A stretch of 64,000 bases of DNA from Scyliorhinus canicula (GCF_902713615.1 NC_052152.1:167832712-167896711); one strand, 5' to 3'; positions 4,000-60,141 are shown, counted from the stretch's first letter. Numbers and translations are program-made. Notes: generated by a model from the letters alone, not told the origin.

Positions 4000-4639
4000 G
4001 TGGGGCGGTTGCAATGGGAGTCCCCATTGATAGTGGCAGGAACAGAAAATCCTGCCACCATCAAATGCCAACCGCCTCCCGCTGCTGAGTAACACATGGC
4101 TGGGAGATCGGAGAATCCTGCCTATTATTTTTTTTCAGAGATTTTGGACTTAATGGAACACAAAGTCAAGCTCGATGTAAGCAGGTGACTAACCTAAAAT
4201 ACACTGGCCAGAATTTTACTTTTCTCGTGCAGGCACCCGCTCAACGCGTAAAGTGCACCAAGTCGCAGGAGAAGACGTAGGACACGTGTCTTCACACACT
4301 TGTGAACCGTTTCACTCGGCAGGCACGCACAGGTGTTGAAAGTGCACATTGACAATCAAGTAGCCAATTTCTCCCATTGAGGGGCCAACTGAACACAATT
4401 TTACAATTCTCCAATTCTCCCTGTTCTTGGCACCCACAATCTCCCTGCCCTGCCCAGTAATGCACAGCCTTTCAAAGACTGCGACCAGGAACACATTTTG
4501 TGCCTGCCTCCAGTGTGCATGCCCGACGGATGATTCATTCAGGCCCAGTGGCGTGCGGGGGGGGGGGGGGGGGGGCAACGGTGCATTGGCCCCGGGCATC
4601 CATTGGATGGGGGCATCCAATCAGAGAAGGAAAAAAACA

Positions 4640-4885
4640 TTTTTTTTTTTTTTTTAATTTTTTTTTTTAAATTTAGATTACCCAATTATTTTTTTCAATT
4701 AAGGGGCAATTTAGCGTGGCCAATCCACCTACTCTGCACATTTTTTGGGTTGTGGGGGCGAAACCAACGCAGACACGGGGAAAATGTGCAAACTCCACAC
4801 GGACATTGACCCAGAGCCGGGATCGAACCTGGGACCTCAGTTCCGTGAGGCGGTTGTGCTAACCACTAGGCCACCGTGCTGCCCC
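4640..4885 (-). mobile_element. HE1-like V-SINE, short A-tailed subtype, inserted in the hAT 5' subterminal region
   Basis: Nearly identical to 2307-2542; TSD agagaaggaaa(a/t)aa on both sides. Confidence 0.9.
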
Positions 4886-5515
4886 AGAGAAGGAAATAAG
4901 ATAGTAATTTTAAAATTTCAGCGGTGATAAATCAATTTTTGGAGGCTCACCACACTGCAGAGGCAGTTGTTAGCCCTTTATTCCTTTAACATGGTGTACC
5001 CTTTCTGTCTAGAGAAAATGGTCCTTCTCCCCATCCCCCCACACGCATGCGGATGATGTACGTGGTGCAACCATCAAAAGCAACAAGCAGACGTGGCTGT
5101 TCATTCCTGCGTTTCCTCGAGTCATAACTCGTCTTTTCTTCAGCTTTTTGTGCATCTAGATTAGTTCTTTTACCTACTCAGGTCAGTGAATAGCTCTAGA
5201 ACAGGTGCAACTACGGTTTTGTATAGGTTTTTTGGCGATATTTAATGAAATATTTACGTGGGATGTAGTAAGAGTGAAGTCTGGATGATCAGAGGACTGC
5301 TATGGCATTTAATCTCGGAATAGGAGACATTTATTCCTTAACATGCTAATATTCGAATACAGATACCACTAATTTGCAAGTCTATGATATAAATTGCACA
5401 AAATTATCAGTGGAGAATCAGTGTGAAATAATTTGATACGAAGGAACAAAGAAATGAAATATGGTTTATCCGTCTGCAACTGACCGATTGTTTACCATTT
5501 TCTTCCCATTTTCTC

Positions 5516-7939
5516 ATGCGTCTTACGGTTTTTGAGATAGAAAATGAAATGTTACGAGTATTTCGTGTACAACCGAGTGGAGCACAGAACAGGAAAAAAA
5601 AGAGGGCCAGAGTCGAAGAAGAGTCCCATGAAAGAGGGGCATTAGATGCATGGATAAAAAGAAGTAAAGAAGAAGTAGGAGAACCTGGAGAAGTAAAAGA
5701 TGATGTGGGTGCAGAGAAGAATTTTTCTGATACGGATTCAGCTCGGTCAGAACATAATACTCTCTCTCCTCAGTCTCGTTGGCAGGATGATGATCCAGGT
5801 AAAGAAAGTAAAGAAGATATTTGCATATTTTTGCAAAGAAGCGATTTTGGCTGTTTGAAGAAACCGATTCCAGATCATTTGAAGATGACAATATTACAAC
5901 ATGGCCCTGAAAGATATCAGAATAAAAGTGGTCCATTTGCTGAGAAGGATGGGAGATCATTTTCCAAACAGTGGTTTGATAAAGTTTCCACAAATGGAGA
6001 AATTGTGGAGAGAAAATGGTTGTTATACTCTCCATATCGGAAAGCATTCTACTGTTTTGTTTGCTTTTTGTTTTCAAAGGAGCATTTGTCGTCTGTGTCA
6101 AACTTTGGAAAGGAAGACGGTTTCTCCACTTGGAGAAAATTAAATCCAACAATACATGACCATGAGAAAAGCCCTTCTCATAGAGCTCACATGAGGGAAT
6201 ACCTGGACCTTGTAGTTCGACTCCATCATTCAACTACGATAGATGCTGAACTTCAACAGCAAATGTCTGCTGAAAAGAAAAGATGGAAAGCTATAACTGA
6301 ACGGATTGTCGAGGTTATATCCTTTCTGGCAAAACAGAATCTGGCCTATTGTGGACATCGAGGAGAAGGAATATCTGGGTTATCAGAGCCAGGGGAGACA
6401 GTCAGTGAAAATACAGGAAACTTTCTAGCAACAATCAGACTTTTGGCCAAATATGATGACATCTTAGCAAAACACTTGCAGAGAGGGAAAGAGAAACCAA
6501 AAAGTGTCACCTACTTGTCCAACAGAATTCAAAACGAAATAATCAATCTTCTTGGTGAAACTGTCAAGAAAAATATAATTTCCGAAATTAAGGACGCAAA
6601 ATATTTTAGCATAATGCTGGATTCAACTCCAGATATTGCCCATGAAGATCAGGTTTCTGAAATTCTGCGTTACGTTCATATTGATGAAAACAGAAAAGTA
6701 GAAATAAAGGAGACATTTCTGGGATTTTTTCAAGTCAACAAGAAAGATGCAGTCAGCCTGGTAAATAAAATTCAGGAAAAATTGGAAGAAGACAAAATTT
6801 CCATGAATGACTGTCATGGTCAAGCATATGATAACGCAGCAGTTATGGCTGGAGTGAGAGGAGGTGTTCAACAAAAAATTCTTGAAGTTAACCCAAAAGC
6901 TGTGTTTGTGAACTGCGAGAACCACAGCCTCAATTTGGCCTGTGTCCATGCAAGTGAGGTGCAACCTGTTGTTGTTACATTTTTTGGCATTCTAGAAAAA
7001 CTCTTTACTTTTTTTTCTTCATCTACTTCTCGTTGGGAAGTGTTAAAATCATTTGTCACTCGGACTGTGAAAAGACAGTGTGACACAAGATGGAGTTCCA
7101 GCCATGATGCTGTGCAAGTAATCCACGAAGAGTGTGACAACATTATTGCAAGCCTTCAACACCTGCTGGAAGGAGAATTTTCAAGGGAAACTAAATCTGA
7201 TGCAGGATCGCTACTTAACTCTATTCAACAGTTCCCGTTTATAGCTTTATTAAATTTTTGGTACTCAGTTTTATCATCAGTGGAGAAAGTCTCAAAACGT
7301 TTGCAGGATCCGAAAATGGGGTTCCATGAAGCTTCTTGTGATCTGAGAGGACTTATTCATATCTTGAATTTGAAGAATGACGAAATTATCCACAATGCAA
7401 TAGATTTAGCCAATGAATATTCTGAAAATTGGGGAATACCAATTGCACGAACAAGGAGAAGAAGAAGAATGCCTGGAGAGTCAGCAAGAGATAGTGGACT
7501 GACGGCACAAGAAGAAATGAATAGAGTAATGGTAGAGATTGTGAACAGATTAAAAACTGAAATTGAAGACCGCAGTGTCCGTCTTCAAAGACTCAGTGAC
7601 CGATTTTCTTTTCTTCTGAACTTGAATTCAGTAGTGATTGAAGATGAACAAGGAAGAGAGAAATTAAAAAAGGAATGTTCAGACTTTGCAAATTATTATG
7701 ACAATGATGTGGTTGCAATTCAGTTATATGACGAAATTATTGATTTTGTGATGCTCCTTCGAGCTGGAGGGAATAGAGTTCCCCCTGATCCTAAAGATGC
7801 TCTGGAGTCTTTACTGCAGTATGGGAGGGATGGCTTTCCGACGCTGTGTGTTTCATACAGATTACTGCATACAATTGCATTTTCAGTCGCAAGCTGTGAA
7901 AGGTCATTTTCAAAACTGAAATTAATAAAACATATCTGA
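5516..7939 (+). CDS. hAT transposase (ZMYM1-like / DUF4371 type with TTF-type zinc finger); C-terminal frameshift
   Basis: 807-aa ORF with WLLYS...YCFVCFLF...HEKSPSH zinc finger, catalytic MLDSTPD and AYDNAAVM, CENH (CxxH), TRW and SCERSFSKLKLIK. The conserved tail TYLRSSMSQERLTNLALISIE continues in another frame to a stop at 8074-8076. Confidence 0.92.
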   Translation: MRLTVFEIENEMLRVFRVQPSGAQNRKKKRARVEEESHERGALDAWIKRSKEEVGEPGEVKDDVGAEKNFSDTDSARSEHNTLSPQSRWQDDDPGKESKEDICIFLQRSDFGCLKKPIPDHLKMTILQHGPERYQNKSGPFAEKDGRSFSKQWFDKVSTNGEIVERKWLLYSPYRKAFYCFVCFLFSKEHLSSVSNFGKEDGFSTWRKLNPTIHDHEKSPSHRAHMREYLDLVVRLHHSTTIDAELQQQMSAEKKRWKAITERIVEVISFLAKQNLAYCGHRGEGISGLSEPGETVSENTGNFLATIRLLAKYDDILAKHLQRGKEKPKSVTYLSNRIQNEIINLLGETVKKNIISEIKDAKYFSIMLDSTPDIAHEDQVSEILRYVHIDENRKVEIKETFLGFFQVNKKDAVSLVNKIQEKLEEDKISMNDCHGQAYDNAAVMAGVRGGVQQKILEVNPKAVFVNCENHSLNLACVHASEVQPVVVTFFGILEKLFTFFSSSTSRWEVLKSFVTRTVKRQCDTRWSSSHDAVQVIHEECDNIIASLQHLLEGEFSRETKSDAGSLLNSIQQFPFIALLNFWYSVLSSVEKVSKRLQDPKMGFHEASCDLRGLIHILNLKNDEIIHNAIDLANEYSENWGIPIARTRRRRRMPGESARDSGLTAQEEMNRVMVEIVNRLKTEIEDRSVRLQRLSDRFSFLLNLNSVVIEDEQGREKLKKECSDFANYYDNDVVAIQLYDEIIDFVMLLRAGGNRVPPDPKDALESLLQYGRDGFPTLCVSYRLLHTIAFSVASCERSFSKLKLIKHI

Positions 7940-8868
7940 GGTCTTCTATGTCGCAGGAGCGACTGACCAACCTGGCTTTAATAAGCATTGAAAAAAAATT
8001 TCTCATAGCTGATGTAAAAAGTGAAGTAGTTCAGGTGTTTTGTGACAGGAGGTATCATTTGGGGAAAATAACTTAATAAATTTGATTGATTAATATTAAA
8101 ATCGAATAAAGCGTTTATTTCATGTTTCATCTGTGTTTATATATTCAAAATGTTTTCCTTTCTCATAATATTTCTCAGTATATTAGGCCTTATACTTGAG
8201 TGTTTGGGGCATATAATCAAGATTTGCCCCGGGCATCACCAGACCTCTGCACGCCGCTTTTCAGGCCACAGTTCTTGCAAAGTCATTAAGGTAAAATTAC
8301 CCCTTTTGATTTTAAAGACTCACTTTTCAAATTAAGCTAAAATGTTTCAATGTAGAATGTTGGCATCCATATAAATGTACCAGATATAATTTGTAATGGG
8401 CACAAAGATACCAAGAGCTGAATTCATTATAGAAAATAATTCTTATAATGAATGGACTTTTGGGGTCATTACATAAGAAACACTTTAGTCTTTTTTAACA
8501 AGTATGTGGCTTTATTTGTGCATTAATTTAGTTAATTTATAGGAAATATATAATTCTACTGCAATAAAGCTGAGTTCATGGAAACCCTGAGTCCCTGGCT
8601 TTCTGACAGCTGATCCTCCTCCCTATCCCTCACACCACAGCTGTGACCTCCGGATTCCCTGATCTCCCTCTCCCCCAGCCCCAAGCTGCATGCTCCATGA
8701 CCCCCCCGCGATAACTTTCCCACCTCAGCAGCCAAGAAGACTTGTGGCAAATGCTCCTCTAAGATTCATTTAATAAGTATCTGAGGCTGGACTGTTCCTT
8801 TAGGAGCTCTGCTGTTCTGCAGAAGACAATAAAACACTGTCTACCAAATTGCTAGTCACATGTCACAT

Positions 8869-17271: not shown

Positions 17272-17497
17272 GGGCATCCCAGTGGGTTAGCACTGCTGCC
17301 TCACAGCGCCGAGGACCCAGGTTTGATCCCGGACTTGGGTCACTGTCCGTGTGGCGTTTGCACATTCTTCCTGTGTCTGCGTGGGTTTCACCCCACAACC
17401 CAAAGATGTGCAGGGCAGGTGGATTGAACACGCTAAATTGCCCCTTAATTGGAAAAAAAGAATCGGATAATCTAAATTTATTAATTTTTAAATAAAT
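17272..17497 (+). mobile_element. HE1-like SINE, short A-tailed subtype
   Basis: Head and V-domain ending CCCCTTAATTGGAAAAAA...TCTAAATTT. Confidence 0.85.
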
Positions 17498-27619: not shown

Positions 27620-27830
27620 TAAAAATAAATTTAGGGTACCCAATTATTTTTATCCCAATTAAGGGGCAATTTAGTGTGGCAAATCCACTTAACCTGCACA
27701 TCTTTGGGTCCTGGGGGTGAAACCCACGCAGACACGGGGAGATTGTGCAAACTCCACACGGACAGTGACCCAGGGCCGGGAATGGAACCCGGGTCCTCAG
27801 CACCATAGTCCCATTGCGCCATGTGCCGCC
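27620..27830 (-). mobile_element. HE1-like SINE, short A-tailed subtype, with TSD
   Basis: TSD tgtattcaatga(a/g)tttt on both sides. Confidence 0.85.
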
Positions 27831-32878: not shown

Positions 32879-32912
<34 letters not shown>

Positions 32913-33425
32913 GGGGGGGGGGGGGGGGGGGGGCGAGGCGGGGGGGGGGGGGGGGGCGAGGCGGGGGGGCGGGCCTGAGGCGGGGGGGGCGGGCCCGAGG
33001 CGGGAGGGCCCGAGGCGGACGGAGCCCGAGGCGGGGGGCGGGCGCGGGGGCGGGGCCGAGGGGGGGCGGACGGAGGGGGGGGGCGGACGGAAGGGGCCGC
33101 CCTGGGGGAGGGCGGCCACCGCGCATGCGCTGGTTGGCACCGGCCCAACTGCGCATGTGCGGGACCCGAGTCTCTGGCGCCCCCTAGCACATGGCGCCCC
33201 GGGCGACTGCCCGAGTTGCCGGTGCCTTGGGCCGGCCCTGAAGACAGGAGCAGCAGATACATGGGGATACAAACACCTGGAAGATCCTCTCCAAGCCACC
33301 TACCATTCTGACTTGGAAATATATTGCTGTTCCTTCATTGTCATTGAGTTCATATCCTGAAACTCCCTCTCCACTGCACGTGTACCTAAAACACATGGAC
33401 TGCAGTGGTTCAAAAAGGCAGCTCT
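32780..33425 (+). mobile_element. CR1/L2-type LINE 3' end fragment, interrupted by the MITE
   Basis: ccactaccatctag...gcagcagatacatggg...ctgacttggaaatatattgc...catggactgcagtggttca; paralog at 46430-46750. Confidence 0.7.
32824..33240. mobile_element. hAT-family MITE (CAGGGCCGGCCC TIR)
   Basis: TIRs CAGCGCCGGCCC / GGGCCGGCCCTG; perfect 8-bp TSD aagacagg (32816-32823, 33241-33248); inserted into a LINE 3' fragment. Confidence 0.92.
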
Positions 33426-36700: not shown

Positions 36701-38588
36701 GCTCTCGTTCCTCAATGGGCTCTCAGTTCCCAGAGTGACGAGGTTCATGGTGCACCACAGATCGAACCATAGGCCTGGTGATTCATAACAGCAGAGTGGT
36801 CATATGCTGTCGCTTAATTTTACTCTTCTTCAACCCTGTCAGCAGTTAAGGCACTGATCTTTCAACCTCCTTCAGTTCACCCTCTGAGAAGGGATGTAAT
36901 TTCCCCCGGCGTGATGAAAAATTGGAAGATGTGGGGAGATTCCAGTGAGCAGCTGCTTTAATGAGATTCATGAGATGTTAAAGAATACAAATTACCTTCA
37001 CACCGCTTGGCAATGGGGATAACCGACCTGCTATTAACCAGCCATCAGAAGAAATGTAAACTGTTTTTGCCTGCTGCTAGATTCTCTGCTCCTGCTGCTA
37101 TGAAACCCGTCACAAGTTGGGTGGAAAGTCCTTAAAGGAGCTCACTACTTATCAGGCTGTACCAGAGAATGCCCAGAACATGCAGGAGACTAGATACCTG
37201 CACTTCAGTGGGAAAACTTAGAGATCATTCAGTTTTCACATGGTGACACAGTCCACATAAGTGAACGGGAGCAGATTTTTGGAGTAAGGAGCAACAGCTG
37301 GAACAGCTGCTGCTGCTGTCTAGAAGTGTCCCATTCATCAGAGGTTCCAAGTTGCTGCAGGGGAAAGATAGAGAGAGGGAGAATCAAATCATTGGAAAAC
37401 GAATGGCATAACTTAGTGAGGCAGCCTCTTATCTCTACCCAAGTATCTGTTTTTATTTTCTCCATGAAGAGATATTAGAAGCAACGAAAAGCACTTATCA
37501 GAATAATGTAGGTTCAGCTTCAGAGATGTATGTCATTTTGGTAGATTTTTAACAATACAGCATAATCAACAAAGCATTCTGCTTTTGGTTCAAGAGATTT
37601 ATGATTCTAAAAAGTTTGTGCTGCAGAAAGGAAAGCATCTTTTCAATTCAAAATTCAATTCGTAACTGCTTGATTTCAAAAGACGTGCTGAGGCAAAGAG
37701 GTTGAACAACAACTGAAGAACTACCACCTGGGAAATCCTCAGGATTGGGTGGATTTTCAATAGATTTTAGTCATTAAATGTTTCAGAAAAATATTACCAA
37801 CTGGCAACGTGAAAGGTATTGGACCCTAAGTGCTACTAAAGAATAACAAATGAGCTTTGCAATGAAATCCCAATTGTAACATTTTGACTCCATGACAAGA
37901 AGAATGTCCTTTCTAATTTTCTTCTAAATGGACTCATGGGAAAAGACTATCTATCTGTCAGCAGCTTAGAGCCATGTAATTGCTAAATTGACAGAAATAT
38001 TGGGAGGAATTCTCCCAGCACCTTTGGAGATTTGGTGGGAGGTGACCTGGGGACATTTTTGGGAGGAGACCCAATAATGCCAGCTGCCTGTCCCTTTCTG
38101 ACTCCTAACACTTTTACCAAAGATAGCTTCCCCAGTAATAGTGGGAAGGTAGTTGAATAAGTTATTTATAGGGGTTTTCATCTAGTCATTCCAATTTACC
38201 CAGAGGCAACAGGGAACCCTGCAATGTGCATAACTCAGCCTCTCACAAGAGGTGAGTGCACAGCCAGAGGTGCCAGCGGTTTGATTGTTACCAGAAATCT
38301 GGCCTTTATTTGCCAACAAAGGAAAGTCTATGTACACCAGCATCCCTGACTGCTTAAATTGGGGAAACAGGAAACTCCCAGCTATTTAGTCACACAATTA
38401 AATATTAATGATCTATATGTCATACCAACTTGACTTCAAAGCTAGTGAAATATAGATCTCCTTCGGCTTGACAAGTTGTCCAATTTTTACCTTGCCAGAA
38501 CTAAATCATGATTTTCATATTTGACAGGGCCTTAACATGTGCAGCAGATGCAATTGCCAAGAATGATTTCTCAGAGGAGTGAGACCAA

Positions 38589-41283
38589 GGGCGAAATTCT
38601 CCGACCCCACGCAGGGTCGGAGAATAGGCGGGAAGCGGCGTTATTTCCGCTCCCGCAGGTTTTTCAATTCTCCCGCCGGTAAAAAACCGGCGTTGTGCAA
38701 ATCCCGCCGGCAGCCTGTGAAAACAGCTGGCGCCGGCGGGATTTCATTTTTTTTGCACTGACCTTAAATCTCCGGCCCGGATGGGCCGAAGTCCCGCCGA
38801 CGTGGCCAGGGGTCACGTCGGCGAAAATCACAGTTGATTTAAAACGGCGTCAACCATTGATGATGGTTGACGCCGTTCAGTGTCGGGGGTGGGTTGCGGC
38901 ATCGGGGGGGGGGTGGGTTCCGGCATCGGGGGGGGTGGGTTGCGGCATCGGGGGGGGGTGGGGGGTGGGTTGCGGCATCGGGGGAGTGGGTTGCGGCATC
39001 GGGGGGTGGGTTGCGGCATGGGGGGGGCATCGGGGGGTGGGTTGCGGCATCGGGGGGTTGCGACATCGGGGGGGCATCGGGGGAGTGGGTTGCGGCATCG
39101 GGGGAGTGGGTTGCGGCATCGGGGGGGGTTGGGTTGCGGCAATCGGGGGGGGGTGGGTTGCGGCATCGGGGGGGGTGGGTTGCGGCATCGGGGGAGTGGG
39201 TTGCGGCAATCGGGGGAGTGGGTTGCGGCATCGGGGGGGGGTTTGCGGCATGGGGGGGCATCGGGGGGGGTGGGTTGCGGCATCGGGGGAGTGGGCTGCG
39301 GCATCGGGGGGTGGGTTGCGGCATCGTGGGGGGGCATGGGGGGGCATCGGGGGGGTTGCGGCAGCGGGGGGTGGGTTGCGGCAGCGGGGGGTGGGTTGCA
39401 GCATGGGGGGGCATCGGGGGGGTGGGTTGCGGCATTGGGGGGGTTTGGGGGCAGCGGCGTGCAGAGAGGGGGGGGCGACGGATGCCCGGGGCCAACGCAC
39501 GTCGCCCCCTCCCTTTACGCCGCTGCCCCCTACCCCAACCATCCCCCCCTCACCACCCCTACCTCCCTCCAATGCCCCTACATCCCCTCCCACACACCCT
39601 ACCCCCCTCCCCACCACCCCTACCCCCCCATCCCAACGCCGCTACCCATCTCTCGCAACTGCCGCAACCCCCCTCTCTCCAACGCCGGGTCAACCCCCCC
39701 CCCTTAACGCCGGTCCCCCCCCTCAACGCCGGGTCCCCCCCCCCTCAACGCCGGTACCCACACCCCGTCCCCGTCCCTCTGAAGGCCGGTACCCACACCC
39801 CCCCCTCTCTCCTCCTCCCCCCCTCTCTCCTCCTCCCCCCCTCCTTCCTCCTCCCCCCCTCCTTGCTCCTCCCCCCCTCCTTCCTCCTCCCCCCCCTTCC
39901 TTCCTCCGTCCCCCCCCTTCCTTCCTCCCCCCCTTCCTTCCTCCGTCCCCCCCCTTCCTTCCTCCCCCCTTCCTTCCTCGTTAGTGGGGGGGGGGGGTGC
40001 GGCGTTGGAGGGGGGTAGGGGTGGTGAAGGGGTTGGGGTGGTGAGGGGAGGGGGTTGGGGTAGGGGCAGCGGCGTGCAGAGGAGGGGGGCGACGGATGCC
40101 CGGGGCCAATGCACCGTCGCCCCCCCCTCTGCACGCAGCTGCCCCTACCCCAACCCCCTCCCCTCACCACCCCTACCCCCTTCACCACCCCTACCCCCCT
40201 CCAACGCCGCACCCCCACACCCCCACCCCCACCCCCCACTAACGGCGCACCCCCCCCCACTAACGGAGGAAGGAAGGGGGGGAGGAGGGGGGGAGGAGGA
40301 GAGAGAGGGGGGGAGGAGGAGAGAGGGGGGGGAGGAGGAGAGAGGGGGGGGAGGAGGAGAGAGGGGGGGGTGTGGGTACCGGCCTTCAGAGGGAGGGGGA
40401 AGGGGTGTGTGTACCGGCGTTGAGGGGGGGGGGACCCGGCGTTGAGGGGGGGGACCCGGCGTTGGGGGAGGGGGGGACCCGGCATTGGGGGAGGGGGACC
40501 CGGTGTTGGGGGAGGGGGGGACCCGGCGTTGAGGGGGGGGGGGACCCGGCGTTGAGGGGGGGACCCGGCGTTGAGGGGGGGGGACCCGGCGTTGAGGGGG
40601 GGACCCGGCGTTGGGGAGGGGGGGGACCCGGCGTTTGAGGGGGGGGAACCGGCGTTGGGGGAGGGGGGGGACCTGGCGTTGAGGGGGGGGACCCGGCGTT
40701 GGGGGAGGGGGGGGACCCGGCGTTGGGGGGGGTGGGGACCCGGCGTTGGAGGGGTGTAGGTGTGGTGGGGAGGGAGGTAGGGGTGGTGGGGAGGGAGGTA
40801 GGGGTGGTGGGGAGGGAGGTAGGGGTGGTGAGGGGGGGGGTTGAGGTAGGGGTGGTGAGGGGGGGGGTTGGGGTAGGGGGCAGCGGCGTACAGAGGGGGG
40901 GCGACGGTGCATTGGCCCCGGGCATCCGTAGCCCCCCCTCTCTGCCCGCCGCTGCCCCCAAACCCCCCCCCCCAAATGCCGGAACACACCCCCCCCCAAA
41001 TGCCGGAACACACCCCCCCCAAATGCCGGAACACCCCCCCCCCATGCCGGAACACACCCCCCCCCCAAATGCCGGGTCTGTCTCTCTCCTCCTCCTCCTC
41101 CAAAATACGCCGGGTCTCACCACTTCCGCAGCTGGAGAAATTGACGCGTATAGCGTCAGTCAGCTGCTGGCCCCTCCGGGAACGGAGAATAGCGGCCTTA
41201 AAGAAGGCCCCGACGCCGGAGTGATTAACACCAATTTTTTTCGCAGGCAACCCGCGTTACGAAGGGCTACGGAGAATCCAGCC
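38589..41283. mobile_element. GC-rich foldback element with Harbinger-like termini, minisatellite arrays and internal palindrome
   Basis: Termini GGGCGAAATTCTCC / GGAGAATCCAGCCC; flanks caa/cat; internal inverted arms. Confidence 0.8.
38886..39445 (+). repeat. G-rich minisatellite (GGGTTGCGGCATCGGGGGG)n
   Basis: About 19-21-nt unit repeated more than 20 times. Confidence 0.9.
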
Positions 41284-41953
41284 CCATGTTAGAAATTAGC
41301 AATATACCTGCCATATATATATATAACATATATAAAATCAGCTTGAAATTGTTAAAGGAATCGGTTGGTGCTGCAAGTTTTGTTTTCCAAGAAACACCTT
41401 AAGATTTGAAACAAATTACTGGAATGAAGATTCTTAGGTGATGACAGCTGTGCCCAGCTCAGGTCAGGAAAGGCCTTGGCAAAGTAACAGTGCAGCTACT
41501 TAACACAAACAGCCATACTATAAAACTGTGTTCACTTCACCTTGCTTAATTAAATTGCTTGCTGATGTCTGTGAGTCCATTAGTGTGTGACAGTAGAATA
41601 GAAGTTACTTTAGTGAACAACTCTATGGTTCAGTTTGATAATAATTAATGAGCTAAATGGCCTTTATGAATGGTTTGTTCACAAGCCTTATGAACAACTT
41701 TAGGCAGAAGTCATGGATGATAAGACAGGGACAGATAATAACATTTCTGCCAATTAGCTTTAAAGGCCAGAGGTGGAATGTTTTTTGGGAGGATGAAACT
41801 GGCCATGGGGAACAGCCTATGGTGAGATAAGGAAAAGATGAGGTCAGACCGATTGATGAAGGATGGAAAGTACAAACTAAAACTCAAGAAGCTGTGTTGA
41901 AATTGAATGACACTAGCGGCAAGATTTAGACCCAAGGTTTGGAGAAAGAATAA

Positions 41954-42133
41954 GGGGCGGGATTCTCCATCTCACCAGGCCCGTAGTCAGACGCAGCCCG
42001 CCCCCGGCAATGGGATTCTCCGTTCCCGCAGCTGACCAATGGGGTTTCCCATTATGGCCACCAGGACAGAAACCTGCAGGCGTGGGTGCGCTGCCGGCAA
42101 ATAGGAGGATCCAGCCGATGGAGAATCCTGCAG
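41954..42133. mobile_element. Short Harbinger-type MITE
   Basis: GGGCGGGATTCTCC ... GGAGAATCCTGC termini. Confidence 0.7.
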
Positions 42134-42643
42134 AGGGTATTTTGCTATGAAGGAAATATTTACAGCGTGAACGATCTATGTCAAAAATCCAACCAGGTCC
42201 ACTCCAGAGATGGGTATAAAGTAAGAAGCTTCAATGCAATAGGCAGTGGAGCAAAATGCCTCAGGGTAGGTCCATGCTAACACTCTTGGGTAGTTTGGAA
42301 GTCATGAAGGCATCCAGAAAAAAAGGCTAAAAAGAATAAAGAAAGAGCTGTATGTGCATGCCTGCCATCCTGCCCAATCTGGACTGCTACTTGCTACTTC
42401 AGTCAGATGTTTTTATTGTGTAACCAGTGTGTTATATTCCATCTTAAACTCTGATTAAACACAACATTCCAGCATATTGGTTGCAGTTGATACTGTTTGA
42501 TTGGATAGTGTCAACATCAACTATCTTTCGAAGATACAAATTGTAAGGCATTTTATGATCTCTCATATTTTTGTTTGTAAGTAGAACGTAACCAAGTTAT
42601 GCTATGGACCAGTGTGTGGGGTTCACCGGGTGTGAGGAACTTG

Positions 42644-43363
42644 GGCCGGGATTCTCCCCTACCCGGCGGGGTGGGGGGTCCCAGCGTAGCGGAATGGCGC
42701 CAACCACTCTGGCGTCGGGCCTCCCGAAAGCTGCAGAATTCTCGGCACCTTTAGGGGCTAGGCCCACGCCGGAGTGGTTTCCGCCACACCGACTGGCGCC
42801 AAAACTGGTGGCAACAGCCTTTGGCGCCCGCCGCCCGGCGTCGGGGCTGGCCAAAAGGCCTTCACCGGTCCACGCATGCGCCGGAGCGTCAGCGGCCGCT
42901 GACGTCACCACCGGCGTTTGCGTGGTAGGGGGGTCTCTTCCGCCTCCGCCATGGTGGAGGCCGTGGCAGTGGCAGAAGAAAAAGAGTGCCCCCACAGTAC
43001 TGGCCCGCCAGCCAATGGGTGGGCCCCGATCACGGGCCAGGCCACCGTGGGGGCACCCCCCGGGGTCCGAATGCCCCGCGCCCCCCCCCCCCCCCCCCCC
43101 AGGACCCCGGGGCCCGCTCGCGCCGCCATTCCGGCCGGCACCAGAGGTGCTCCAATTCCCGCCGGCGGGATTGGCCTGTCAGCGGCGGGACTTCGGCCCA
43201 TCGCTGGCCGGAGAATCGCCACGGGGGCCACGCCGGTCGTCGGGGCGTGATTCCCACTCCCGCCGATTCCCGGGTGGCGGAGAATTCTGGCCACGGCGGG
43301 GGTGGGATTTACGCTGGTCCCGGGCGATTCCCTGACCCTATGGGGGGTCGGAGAATTCCGCCC
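42644..43363 (+). mobile_element. Harbinger-type MITE (about 700 bp, GC-rich)
   Basis: GGCCGGGATTCTCC / GGAGAATTCCGCCC termini; 3-bp flanks ttg/ctg; reverse-complement homolog at 59476-60141. Confidence 0.85.
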
Positions 43364-43545
43364 CTGGTGTGAGGAGGACATCAGGACAAAAGGAGAAGAA
43401 TTTTGAATGAAGTCATGATTGCTCAGGCTCATACTGAACTTTATGAAAAATAAAAATAAAAATGCAGCACGGTAGCATGGTGGTTAAATAAGGCAGTTTA
43501 AGTGAACAGAGGCACTCACACACATGTAGGAAATGTGATTGATCC

Positions 43546-58952: not shown

Positions 58953-59475
58953 TTTACAGGGAAGGGAGATGTGGGTAGACAAAGTGTGCAGAGATTAACA
59001 TATCAGTAATTGATGTCATGGGAGTGATGTGGCCACATAAGATAATAAGTTCAAGGGGGTGTCCATGGATATGGGTTGGATATTTATATGGATGGAAAGA
59101 TTACGCTGGGATAAGAGGGCTTTGAGGAGAGAAAGTATGATAATTTGAGATGAAGATTAAATTCACTGAGGTGAAAACGTATTCATCGCAGAGGCTGAGG
59201 AAGGAAAGCAGTGAAGATATCTCAGTGAAACAAAATGTCATTGTCCTTAGTGATCAGTAAAGAATGAGAATTTTAAAGAAAGATGAGGGAGTGGAACTAG
59301 TTCAGATGCTCGAGGTGGAAATCTTAAGTGGAGGCCCTTCGCCCCAATCAACATGAGAAAAAAAAACAGATTATCGGGTCATTGTTGTGCATATTTGATG
59401 AATTTCTGTATTTCCCACATAAAAACAAATACTACGCTTCAGAAAACTACTTAATTCACTGTAAGATGACTTGAG

Positions 59476-60141
59476 GGGCGAAATTCTCCAACCCCCCCCC
59501 CCCCCCCCCCCCCCCCCCCGCCGCAGGGACGGAGAATCGGCCGAGGTCGGCGAAAATCCCGCCCCCGCCGTGGCAGAAATTCTCTGTCACCCGGGAATTG
59601 GCGGAGGCAGGAATCGCGCCCCGCCGATCGGCGAGCCCCCTGCGGCGATTCTCCAGCCCGCGATGGGCCGATGTCCCGCCGCTGAGAGGCCTCTCCCGCC
59701 GCTGTGGTTTCAACTAACTCTGGTGACGGCGGGATTGGCGGCATGAGCGGGCCCCCGGGGCCGTGGGGGGGGGCGCGTAGGGTGATCAGACCCCGGGCGG
59801 GTGCCCCCACGGTGGCCAGGCCCGCGATCGGGGCCCACCAATCAGCGGGCGGGCCAGTGCCATCTTTTTCTTTCGCCGCCGTCACGGCCTCCACCATGGT
59901 GGAGGCGGAAGAGAATCCCCCAGCGGGCATGCGCCGGTGGTGACGTTAGCGGCAGCTGACGCACCAGTGAATGCGCGAACCGGTGAAGGCCTTTCGGCCA
60001 GCCCCGGCGCCGGGCGGCGGGCATCAAAGGCCATTGGCGCCAGAGTATTCCGCACCTTTGGGGAGGCCCGATGCCGGATTGGTTGGCGCCACTCCACTAC
60101 GCCGGGACCCCCACCCCGCCGGGTAGGGGAGAATCCCAGCC
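59476..60141 (-). mobile_element. Harbinger-type MITE, same family as 42644-43363
   Basis: TIRs GGGCGAAATTCTCC / GGAGAATCCCAGCC; TSD gag/gag; inserted in a DeuSINE-like tail. Confidence 0.88.

What the first reader, a model, noticed from the sequence alone, without database searches (positions are those of the whole stretch)
39452..40954. Three ~75-bp 'mini-hAT' hairpin modules inside a Harbinger-ended element match the ends of the hAT transposon 35 kb away
Seen: modules at 39452-39525, 40067-40141 and 40881-40954 (the last inverted) read CAGCGGCGT(G/A)CAGAG(G)nCGACGG-core-CGT(C/A)G(C)nCTCTGC.CG.CGCTG. Their 24-nt core ACGGTGCATTGGCCCCGGGCATCC (40904-40927) is identical to the hAT left subterminus (4578-4601). 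Their ends match the hAT TIRs (CAGTGGCGTGC at 4546; CTCTGCACGCCGCT at about 8245). Each module is therefore a hAT left end folded onto an inverted TIR. None has an 8-bp TSD; the flanks are inverted instead. Established: hAT transposases leave hairpins on flanking DNA, and hairpin opening yields palindromes. Inference: a Harbinger MITE captured a hAT end and amplified it by hairpin or template-switch events. This would give a chimeric element carrying binding sites for two transposase superfamilies, possibly a 'hitch-hiking' or decoy system for hAT ends.
Basis: partly seen in the sequence, partly recalled or inferred. Interest (0 to 1): 0.8.

Follow-up and report, generated by a model that had tools for sequence, protein, structure and literature searches.

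The report
Folded hAT end inside Harbinger-like transposon
A young, high-copy cut-and-paste transposon in a catshark genome carries three copies of a 74-base hairpin at the hinges of its internal palindromes; the hairpin is the left tip of an unrelated (hAT) transposon folded back on itself, which is a real oddity of nested transposons and fold-back repair but not a shown two-transposase system.

Summary
Three 74-75-bp hairpins (39452-39525, 40067-40141, 40881-40954) consist of the first 56 nt of a hAT left end plus the reverse complement of its first 27 nt. A 24-nt core is identical to the hAT copy at 4546-8259, and a second hAT copy from another data set matches even better. The host is a 2,696-bp TIR element (38588-41283). 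A sister species has the exact empty site, and so, on thinner evidence, does another individual of the same species. The joint shows a 3-nt duplication (CCA), and the element ends are not CpG-depleted, so the insertion is recent. Short-read contigs show the hairpin with its fold junction at hundreds to thousands of copy-equivalents, so it is a family feature. Only the middle module has truly inverted flanks (58/59 nt). It is the hinge of a 283-nt near-perfect palindrome and of a 2.2-kb imperfect one, and the outer two modules mirror each other. The palindrome centre lies inside the hAT end, not at its tip. That fits fold-back repair or replication, not hAT flank-hairpin chemistry. No module has an 8-bp TSD, and I found no sign of free copies. 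The decoy or hitch-hiking function is untested. The scan had already noted this stretch and similar foldback elements elsewhere in this genome.

The parts
38585..38587 (.). Left copy of the target-site duplication CCA of the host element
   Evidence: Empty-site joint 38584->41284 with 3 ambiguous letters, in an organism B contig and an organism A contig; bases read
38588..41283 (+). Host non-autonomous TIR element (2,696 bp), Harbinger-like, polymorphic insertion
   Evidence: The left-end bins reach a summed contig depth about 10^4 times that of the single-copy flanks. Related ends occur elsewhere in the window. CpG o/e of the unique ends is 1.15-1.31, against 0.22 in the flank.
38588..38603 (+). 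Left TIR, AGGGCGAAATTCTCCG (the other copies in the window start GGGGCG)
41270..41283 (-). Right TIR, reverse complement GGCTGGATTCTCCG; two bases shorter than the other copies in the window if the TSD is CCA
41284..41286 (.). Right copy of the target-site duplication CCA
38885..39451 (+). G-strand minisatellite 'a' (20-22-bp unit, about 26 copies)
39452..39525 (-). Module M1; the hAT left end reads on the minus strand. It marks a G-to-C strand switch. Flanks are not inverted in sequence.
39526..39979 (+). C-strand arrays b, c, d (CCCTACC-type, CAACGCCGG-type, polypyrimidine)
39980..40262 (.). Inner near-perfect palindrome with M2 as hinge; folds as a stem of about 130 bp, -163.5 kcal/mol, z -24.8
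   Evidence: (I6, I13)
40067..40141 (-). Module M2; hinge of the inner palindrome and of the 2.2-kb imperfect palindrome
40263..40880 (+). G-strand arrays d', c', b'; mirror image of 39526-39979
   Evidence: (I1, I3)
40881..40954 (+). Module M3; the hAT left end reads on the plus strand. It is the mirror image of M1.
40955..41075 (+). C-strand minisatellite 'e' (23-bp unit), 75-81% complementary to array 'a'
   Evidence: (I2, I8)
4546..8259 (+). hAT transposon copy whose ends match the modules; TSD TTCAGGCC at 4538-4545 and 8260-8267
4546..4601 (+). hAT left end: tip, G-run and subterminal motif; homologous to the first 56 nt of each module
   Evidence: second copy L001
8224..8259 (+). hAT right end carrying the GCCCCGGGCATC motif (in the same orientation as at the left end) and the tip
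5516..7939 (+). hAT transposase ORF (807 aa, ZMYM1-like, DUF4371); the hAT dimerisation domain is cut off by a frameshift near 7930

Best explanation
Each module is a relic of a hAT copy that once sat nested in the G-rich interior of a non-autonomous Harbinger-like element. Only the first 56 nt of the hAT left end survive. They are joined, across a 2-nt microhomology (ATCC|GTCG), to the reverse complement of the first 27 nt of the same end. At M2 the inverted copy runs on into at least 60-120 nt of the adjacent flank. I read this as one snap-back (fold-back priming or template switch) event during repair or replication, not as a transposase hairpin reaction. The resulting hairpin has a stem of about 27 bp and an asymmetric loop of about 20 nt. 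It then served as the hinge for further palindrome formation inside the element. M2 is the centre of a 283-nt near-perfect palindrome and of a 2.2-kb imperfect one whose arms carry M1 and M3 as mirror images. The composite spread through the genome passively, by transposition of the host element. Shown: the homology, the fold junction, the palindrome geometry, the empty site, and that the sequence is multi-copy. Inferred: the single origin, the order of events, the repair mechanism, and Harbinger-type mobilisation.
For: Homology to hAT ends: 24 nt identical and 33-34 nt at 97%. A second hAT copy, L001, carries CAGAG, the G-run, CGAC and the CpG variant of the core, and so matches the whole 56 nt. 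The subterminal motif and the tip are also present at the right ends of three hAT relatives, so they are intrinsic to hAT. The right half of each module complements the left-end G-run and CGACG, which the hAT right end lacks. All three modules share the same fold junction, and 16 short-read contigs span it (position 40930). M2 flanks match 58/59 inverted, and the 283-nt palindrome has z -24.8. The M1 region mirrors the M3 region at 71% over 669 columns. GC skew flips from + to - exactly at each module. Mobility and youth of the host: an empty site in organism B (255+ nt on each side of the joint) and, more thinly, in organism A sample S1 (26 nt on the shorter side); a 3-nt duplication; CpG o/e 1.15-1.31 against 0.22 in the flank. 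Multi-copy: summed contig depth over the module bins is hundreds to thousands of times that of the flanks. 31-mers of the inner palindrome are held by several samples of organism A and by organism C, but not by organism B. Fold-back priming at short inverted repeats is an established route to inverted duplications (PMC10622511, PMC3907307).
Against: The outer boundary of M1 and M3 on the 'a'/'e' side falls within about 5 nt of the hAT tip. A pure fold-back model does not predict this, and it hints that the module behaves as a discrete unit. The arms of the large palindrome are only about 71% alike although the insertion is young. So the structure either predates this insertion or is blurred by assembly errors in homopolymer-rich arrays. 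A 2-nt microhomology is weak evidence. No other full-length copy of the family could be fetched, so inheritance of the three-module architecture is inferred from contig depths and short junction contigs. Summed contig depth is not a copy number, and the two libraries of organism A differ by about 100-fold in these GC-rich bins.
Confidence: 0.6

Rival explanations
1. The module is a true two-ended hAT MITE. It arose as an internal-deletion derivative by recombination between the direct repeat GCCCCGGGCATC found near both hAT ends (up to 15 nt, TTGGCCCCGGGCATC, in relative L002). hAT transposase then moved it into the Harbinger-like element, possibly more than once, and the palindromic surroundings arose later.
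For: Both module tips are intact hAT tips pointing outward, as in a normal element. The shared motif lies at about 45-56 nt from the left tip and about 21-32 nt from the right tip, in the same orientation, so a deletion between the two copies would give an element of about 75 bp. The 'a'|M1 and M3|'e' junctions coincide with the tip to within a few bases. Birth of MITEs by microhomology-mediated deletion is documented (PMC3814204).
Against: None of the three modules has an 8-bp TSD. The inner 12 bp of the right stem (CGTCG plus C-run) complements the left end and differs from every hAT right end seen, which has ACCAGA or AAAGAA there. At M2 the inverted symmetry runs straight through the tips into the flanks (58/59). 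The loose-end rows that were shown list none at module borders, although 35 contigs cover the core (that table was truncated).
Confidence: 0.2
2. It is a functional dual-transposase device. A Harbinger vehicle carries hAT binding sites that titrate hAT transposase as decoys or allow cross-mobilisation.
For: Each module keeps two hAT tips with one difference from the TIR of the hAT copy L001 (position 4, C for T), plus one subterminal motif. The modules appear to be present at hundreds to thousands of copy-equivalents. Hermes transposase binds its left end through several BED domains (PMC10368747), so left-end fragments are plausible ligands.
Against: There is no sign of hAT-type mobilisation: no 8-bp TSD and no free copies seen. 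Nothing shows selection for the modules. Within this one element they differ by 9-11% and carry private changes relative to the genomic majority (positions 40911 and 40930). Passive hitch-hiking of a nested relic explains the data.
Confidence: 0.08
3. The large-scale arrangement (three modules, nested palindromes, 2.7 kb) is partly an assembly artefact of long, noisy reads through G/C homopolymer arrays. Only the module and its immediate flanks would be real.
For: No short-read contig spans more than about 150 nt of the interior. Bin 39804-39939 has no laid contigs in any run. Arm identity is low (71%), with many indels in G-runs.
Against: The module, its fold junction, the b'|M junctions and the unique-end|'a'-array junction are all present in short-read contigs from independent samples (records 13, 14, 22). 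The empty-site joint gives an insert of 2,699 nt with clean ends. Earlier notes of this scan describe similar foldback interiors in Harbinger-ended elements on other pieces of the genome; I did not check those notes.
Confidence: 0.1

Closest known systems
Fold-back inversions and palindromes seeded by short inverted repeats (foldback priming at a break; Tetrahymena rDNA palindrome; yeast and human inverted duplications; PMC10622511, PMC3907307; ODIRA, PMC4689423)
   Same: A short interrupted inverted repeat sits at the centre as stem plus asymmetric loop. The DNA on one side is copied in inverted orientation on the other. Nested secondary junctions occur. There is microhomology at the turn-around.
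   Different: The scale here is 0.3-2.2 kb inside a mobile element, not a chromosome arm. The seed is itself made from a transposon end. The product was then multiplied by transposition. The mechanism is inferred from sequence alone.
Foldback transposons with tandem-repeat arms (Drosophila FB, Tetris PMC4079207, Galileo)
   Same: Long inverted arms are built from short tandem repeats around a central segment. The structure is strongly hairpin-forming and is linked to minisatellite birth.
   Different: In those elements the inverted arms reach the element termini and act as the TIRs. Here the palindrome is internal. It is bounded by about 290 and about 210 bp of non-inverted unique sequence, and the true TIRs are only about 15 bp.
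hAT deletion derivatives and MITEs formed by abortive gap repair or microhomology-mediated miniaturisation (Ds from Ac, from my own knowledge; Tc1/mariner example PMC3814204)
   Same: A tiny remnant keeps the transposon tips and a subterminal motif. The junction shows microhomology.
   Different: Both halves are of left-end type. There is no 8-bp TSD and no evidence of independent transposition.
PIF/Harbinger non-autonomous elements (Tourist-like MITEs)
   Same: A 3-nt duplication at the insertion, short TIRs, high copy number, and a presence/absence polymorphism.
   Different: The duplication is CCA, not the classical TWA. At 2.7 kb the element is large for a MITE. No link to a DDE_Tnp_4 or Myb-like gene pair was tested here.

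Membership tests
hAT superfamily (element 4546-8259) | 8-bp target-site duplication | tested here: met
   TTCAGGCC at 4538-4545 and 8260-8267
hAT superfamily (element 4546-8259) | Short TIRs starting YARNG | tested here: met
   CAGTG at the left tip; the right-tip reverse complement is AAGCG here and CAGTG in copy L001. The YARNG consensus is from my own knowledge.
hAT superfamily (element 4546-8259) | Transposase with an RNase-H-like core and a C-terminal hAT dimerisation domain | tested here: met
   DUF4371 at E 7e-15. Relatives at 67-98% identity carry PF14291 and PF05699, most also PF27073. In the window copy the last ~45 residues are shifted into another frame.
hAT-type MITE (the 74-bp module) | Two outward-facing hAT tips on a very short element | tested here: met
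hAT-type MITE (the 74-bp module) | 8-bp direct target-site duplication at each copy | tested here: not met
   Flanks are TTTGGGGG/CCCCCTAC at M1, GGTAGGGG/CCCCTACC at M2 and GTAGGGGG/CCCCCAAA at M3
hAT-type MITE (the 74-bp module) | Independent copies in unrelated genomic contexts | tested here: inconclusive
   The module is multi-copy. The loose-end rows that were shown include none at module borders, but the table was truncated and the genome could not be searched.
PIF/Harbinger non-autonomous element (38588-41283) | 3-bp target-site duplication | tested here: met
   The empty-site joint has 3 ambiguous letters, CCA. It is not the classical TWA. A 1-2-bp duplication is formally possible because the consensus right tip ends in CC.
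PIF/Harbinger non-autonomous element (38588-41283) | TIRs shared with an autonomous element that encodes a DDE_Tnp_4 transposase and a Myb-like protein | not tested
   No such gene is in the window. ORFs in neighbouring related copies have no Pfam match. Earlier scan notes claim such a link elsewhere in the genome; I did not check them.
Foldback (FB-like) transposon | Long inverted arms of tandem repeats that extend to the element termini | tested here: not met
   The palindrome spans 38885-41075 only. The terminal ~290 and ~210 bp show no inverted-repeat match to each other in BLAST; only the ~15-bp TIRs correspond.
Fold-back (snap-back) inverted duplication | Short inverted repeat with an asymmetric loop at the centre and the flank copied in inverted orientation | tested here: met
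   M2: stem of about 27 bp, loop of about 20 nt, flanks 58/59 inverted, 283-nt hairpin at z -24.8. At M1 and M3 this is met only for base composition.

The most novel reading that the evidence does not exclude
The folded hAT end is a portable palindrome seed and transposase bait. A Harbinger-type vehicle carries it to thousands of sites. There it repeatedly triggers fold-back duplication, building the nested palindromes and inverted minisatellite arrays, and it offers hAT transposase thousands of paired tips. That would couple the activity of two unrelated transposon superfamilies, through decoy, cross-nicking or cross-mobilisation.
Probability: 0.1. Interest if true: 0.7.

Novelty: new variant of a known kind. 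Interest (0 to 1): 0.4.

Why it matters
This is a clean natural example in which every layer can be read from sequence. There is a nested transposon relic, a snap-back junction with a defined turn-around point, palindrome growth around that hairpin, and spread of the composite by a second, currently polymorphic transposon family. It gives a concrete substrate for two questions: whether short hairpins seed palindromes in vertebrate germlines, and whether captured ends of one superfamily affect another. It also warns annotators that hAT-like tips in this genome mostly belong to a non-hAT family. It does not by itself reveal a new mechanism.

Tried and rejected
1. I tested whether the G/C-rich minisatellite units derive from the hAT left end. 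Local alignments of five unit consensuses against the end scored no better than shuffled units, so I rejected this.
2. I tested hAT flank-hairpin chemistry as the origin. I rejected it on geometry: the centre is 28-56 nt inside the end, and the C-to-G switch points at about 39980 and 40262 are not locally palindromic and are mirror images of each other.
3. I tried to fetch other copies of the family.
 - A protein search with the ORF that runs across M3 found nothing.
 - A metagenome scan for the 20-nt fold junction gave 11 hits that match only the 20-23 nt, so they are chance matches in GC-rich microbial DNA.
- A sequence look-up in earlier findings was blank.
 - The protein tools did not return loci from this genome itself.
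4. Pfam on ORFs of neighbouring related elements gave no Harbinger domains.
5. Rfam over 38000-42000 gave no match.
6. I compared the target site with the palindromic target proposed in earlier notes (AnAY-NNN-RTnT). This insertion, GAGA-CCA-TGTT, does not fit well.
7. I tried to define TSDs for the other family copies in the window. Their ends could not be paired.

Full report
**What is in the sequence**

The stretch 38588-41283 has a GC-rich interior: 74% GC over 38880-41100, against about 40% in the flanks. In the interior, G-rich and C-rich runs alternate on the plus strand. GC skew is about +0.6 over 38900-39450 and -0.7 to -0.9 over 39500-39950. It is positive again over 40000-40100 and -0.7 over 40100-40250. 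It rises to +0.5 to +0.85 over 40300-40900 and falls to about -0.5 up to 41100.

Each of the three + to - flips falls on a 74-75-bp module:
- M1, 39452-39525
- M2, 40067-40141
- M3, 40881-40954

The two - to + flips, near 39980 and 40262, carry no module.

**Checking the observation**

- The module core occurs four times in the window, in the three modules and at 4581-4599. Chance expectation is 0.03.
- The 15-nt tip occurs only in the modules and at 8245-8259. Chance expectation is 0.07.
- The 24 nt at 40904-40927 are identical to 4578-4601.
- BLAST gives 33-34 nt at 97% between the M2 and M3 cores and the hAT left end.
- The modules fold as DNA hairpins of -29 to -39 kcal/mol, z -5.6 to -8.4.

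**The hAT element**

The element spans 4546-8259 and is flanked by the 8-bp duplication TTCAGGCC. It encodes an 807-aa ZMYM1-like protein with DUF4371. Relatives at 67-98% identity also carry the hAT dimerisation domain.

This copy is dead. A frameshift near 7930 moves the last ~45 residues into another frame. A 248-bp repeat at 4637-4884 has about a dozen other copies in the window and is absent from a 97.5%-identical copy, L001.

The left end of L001 reads tip, CAGAG, G-run, CGACGG and then the core in its CpG form. That matches the whole first 56 nt of the module better than the window copy does (alignment A1).

The motif GCCCCGGGCATC plus the tip is also found at the right ends of the window copy, of L001 and of an 83%-identical relative, L002 (alignment A2). 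So these sequences are intrinsic to the hAT family, not borrowed from the host element.

**Anatomy of the module**

Read in the orientation of M3, a module is hAT left end 1-56 followed by the reverse complement of left end 1-27. The junction is ATCC|GTCG, and two bases (CC) could come from either side.

The right stem includes CGTCG and a C-run. These complement the left-end G-run and are absent from every hAT right end seen. It is better supported than a simple left/right deletion derivative.

**Flanks and palindromes**

- Only M2 has inverted flanks in sequence: 58/59 over 60 nt and 91/114 over 120 nt, z 8-13.
- For M1 and M3 the two flanks are no more complementary than shuffled sequence.
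- The region 39980-40262 folds as a stem of about 130 bp, -163.5 kcal/mol, z -24.8.
- On a larger scale, 39337-39954 mirrors 41067-40426, and 39476-40066 mirrors 40698-40142, each at about 71%.
- Array 'a' (38885-39451) is 75-81% complementary to array 'e' (40955-41075).

The interior is therefore one imperfect 2.2-kb palindrome hinged on M2. M1 and M3 are mirror images, including the orientation of their loops. The order is a, M1, b c d, x' b', M2, b x, d' c' b', M3, e.

**The host element is mobile, young and multi-copy**

I laid short-read contigs of four runs on 37900-41950.
- A 1,446-nt contig of sister organism B runs from 38584 straight into 41284, with more than 255 nt on either side.
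- A contig from a different sample of organism A does the same at single-copy depth. It has only 26 nt on the shorter side of the joint, where a TA microsatellite stops the alignment.
- Three letters are ambiguous at the joint, so the insertion is 2,696 bp plus a CCA duplication. Because the consensus right tip ends in CC, a 1-2-nt duplication cannot be formally excluded.
- The unique ends of the element have CpG o/e 1.15-1.31, against 0.22 in the flank. This fits a recent insertion.
- The left-end bins reach a summed contig depth about 10^4 times that of the flanks. Related ends occur at 41954, 43364 and 59475 in the window.

The modules themselves are multi-copy.
- Thirty-five contigs of run X4 cover the M3 core, and 16 cover position 40930, three bases past the fold junction. 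Summed depths there are thousands of times those of the flanks.
- The majority base at 40911 and 40930 is the M1/M2 state.
- 31-mers of the inner palindrome are held by several samples of organism A and by organism C, but not by organism B.
- Junction contigs link the unique left end to array 'a' and link b' to M2 and M3 (records 13, 14 and 22).

The summed depth is not a copy number. The two libraries of organism A differ by about 100-fold in these GC-rich bins. I therefore claim only hundreds to thousands of copy-equivalents.

**Mechanism**

hAT transposases form hairpins on the flanking DNA at the transposon tip (PMC5499845). That would give a palindrome of flank sequence centred on the tip. 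Here the turn-around is 28-56 nt inside the end, and all copies share the same junction.

The simplest reading has four steps.
1. A hAT copy was nested in the G-rich array of a progenitor element.
2. A break or an aborted repair synthesis occurred at nt 56 of its left end.
3. The end snapped back at a 2-nt microhomology.
4. Synthesis then copied the tip and the adjacent flank in inverted orientation.

This is fold-back priming, or template switching, as described for short inverted repeats near breaks (PMC10622511, PMC3907307; ODIRA for interstitial cases, PMC4689423).

The hairpin then served as a hinge for the larger palindrome. Transposition of the host element multiplied the composite. These steps are inferred.

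One fact fits poorly. The 'a'|M1 and M3|'e' junctions coincide with the hAT tip to within a few bases. This keeps alive the rival that the module is, or once was, a discrete two-ended mini-hAT.

**Comparison with known kinds**

- The element works like a fold-back inversion seeded by a short inverted repeat.
- It resembles foldback transposons such as FB and Tetris (PMC4079207). It fails their defining feature, because the inverted arms do not reach the termini.
- The module has the tips of a hAT MITE but fails the 8-bp TSD test.
- The host fits PIF/Harbinger by its 3-nt duplication and its TIRs. The duplication is not TWA, and the transposase link was not tested.

**Earlier notes of this scan**

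Earlier notes describe this same stretch as a nested foldback (s1-228709). They also describe similar foldback interiors in Harbinger-ended elements on other pieces of this catshark genome (s1-200293, s1-195963, s1-207434), and variable 3-bp duplications for the family (s1-216922, s1-210618). I treated these as leads only.

**Verdict**

This is a new variant of known kinds: a nested transposon relic plus a fold-back palindrome inside a MITE-like vehicle. It is of moderate interest, mainly as a natural, multi-copy and still polymorphic substrate for studying hairpin-seeded palindromes and cross-talk between transposon superfamilies.

Noticed in passing
window 4637-4884: A repeat of about 250 bp sits inside the hAT copy, just after its left end. 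About a dozen other copies lie in the window (for example 2296-2543, 17285-17480, 27626-27800). It is absent from the 97.5%-identical hAT copy L001, where 15 nt align on both sides of the gap, as a target duplication would. It is probably a SINE insertion.
   Followed up: partly
window 7925-7945: A frameshift in the hAT transposase ORF moves the last ~45 residues (part of the hAT dimerisation domain) into another frame. This copy is probably inactive, although near-identical copies with an intact C-terminus exist in other data sets.
   Followed up: yes
L002:3395-3434: A Logan contig of an 83%-identical hAT relative ends in Illumina adapter sequence directly after the right TIR, one base short of the tip. 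Library fragments therefore ended at the transposon end. This could be an excised linear element or just a library accident.
   Followed up: no
window 41954-43364 and 59475-60100: Further members of the same TIR family (GGGGCGG(A/G)ATTCTCC) lie here. They have different, CpG-rich interiors and long G or C homopolymers but no hAT module. Their ends could not be paired into elements with matching TSDs.
   Followed up: partly
L001:1033-1619: The second hAT copy has about 585 bp that are missing from the window copy at about 5568. Either the window copy has an internal deletion upstream of, or within, the start of the ORF, or L001 has an insertion.
   Followed up: no
window 32881-33001: A G-rich low-complexity stretch is 70-80% similar to the polypurine and b' arrays of the element. 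It may be an unrelated simple repeat or a fragment of a related element.
   Followed up: no
window 38965->41264 and 39641->41082 (joints): Organism B contigs join the start of array 'a', or region b, directly to the right end of the element. Only 21 nt lie on the shorter side of each joint. This hints at shorter family members without modules in the sister species.
   Followed up: no
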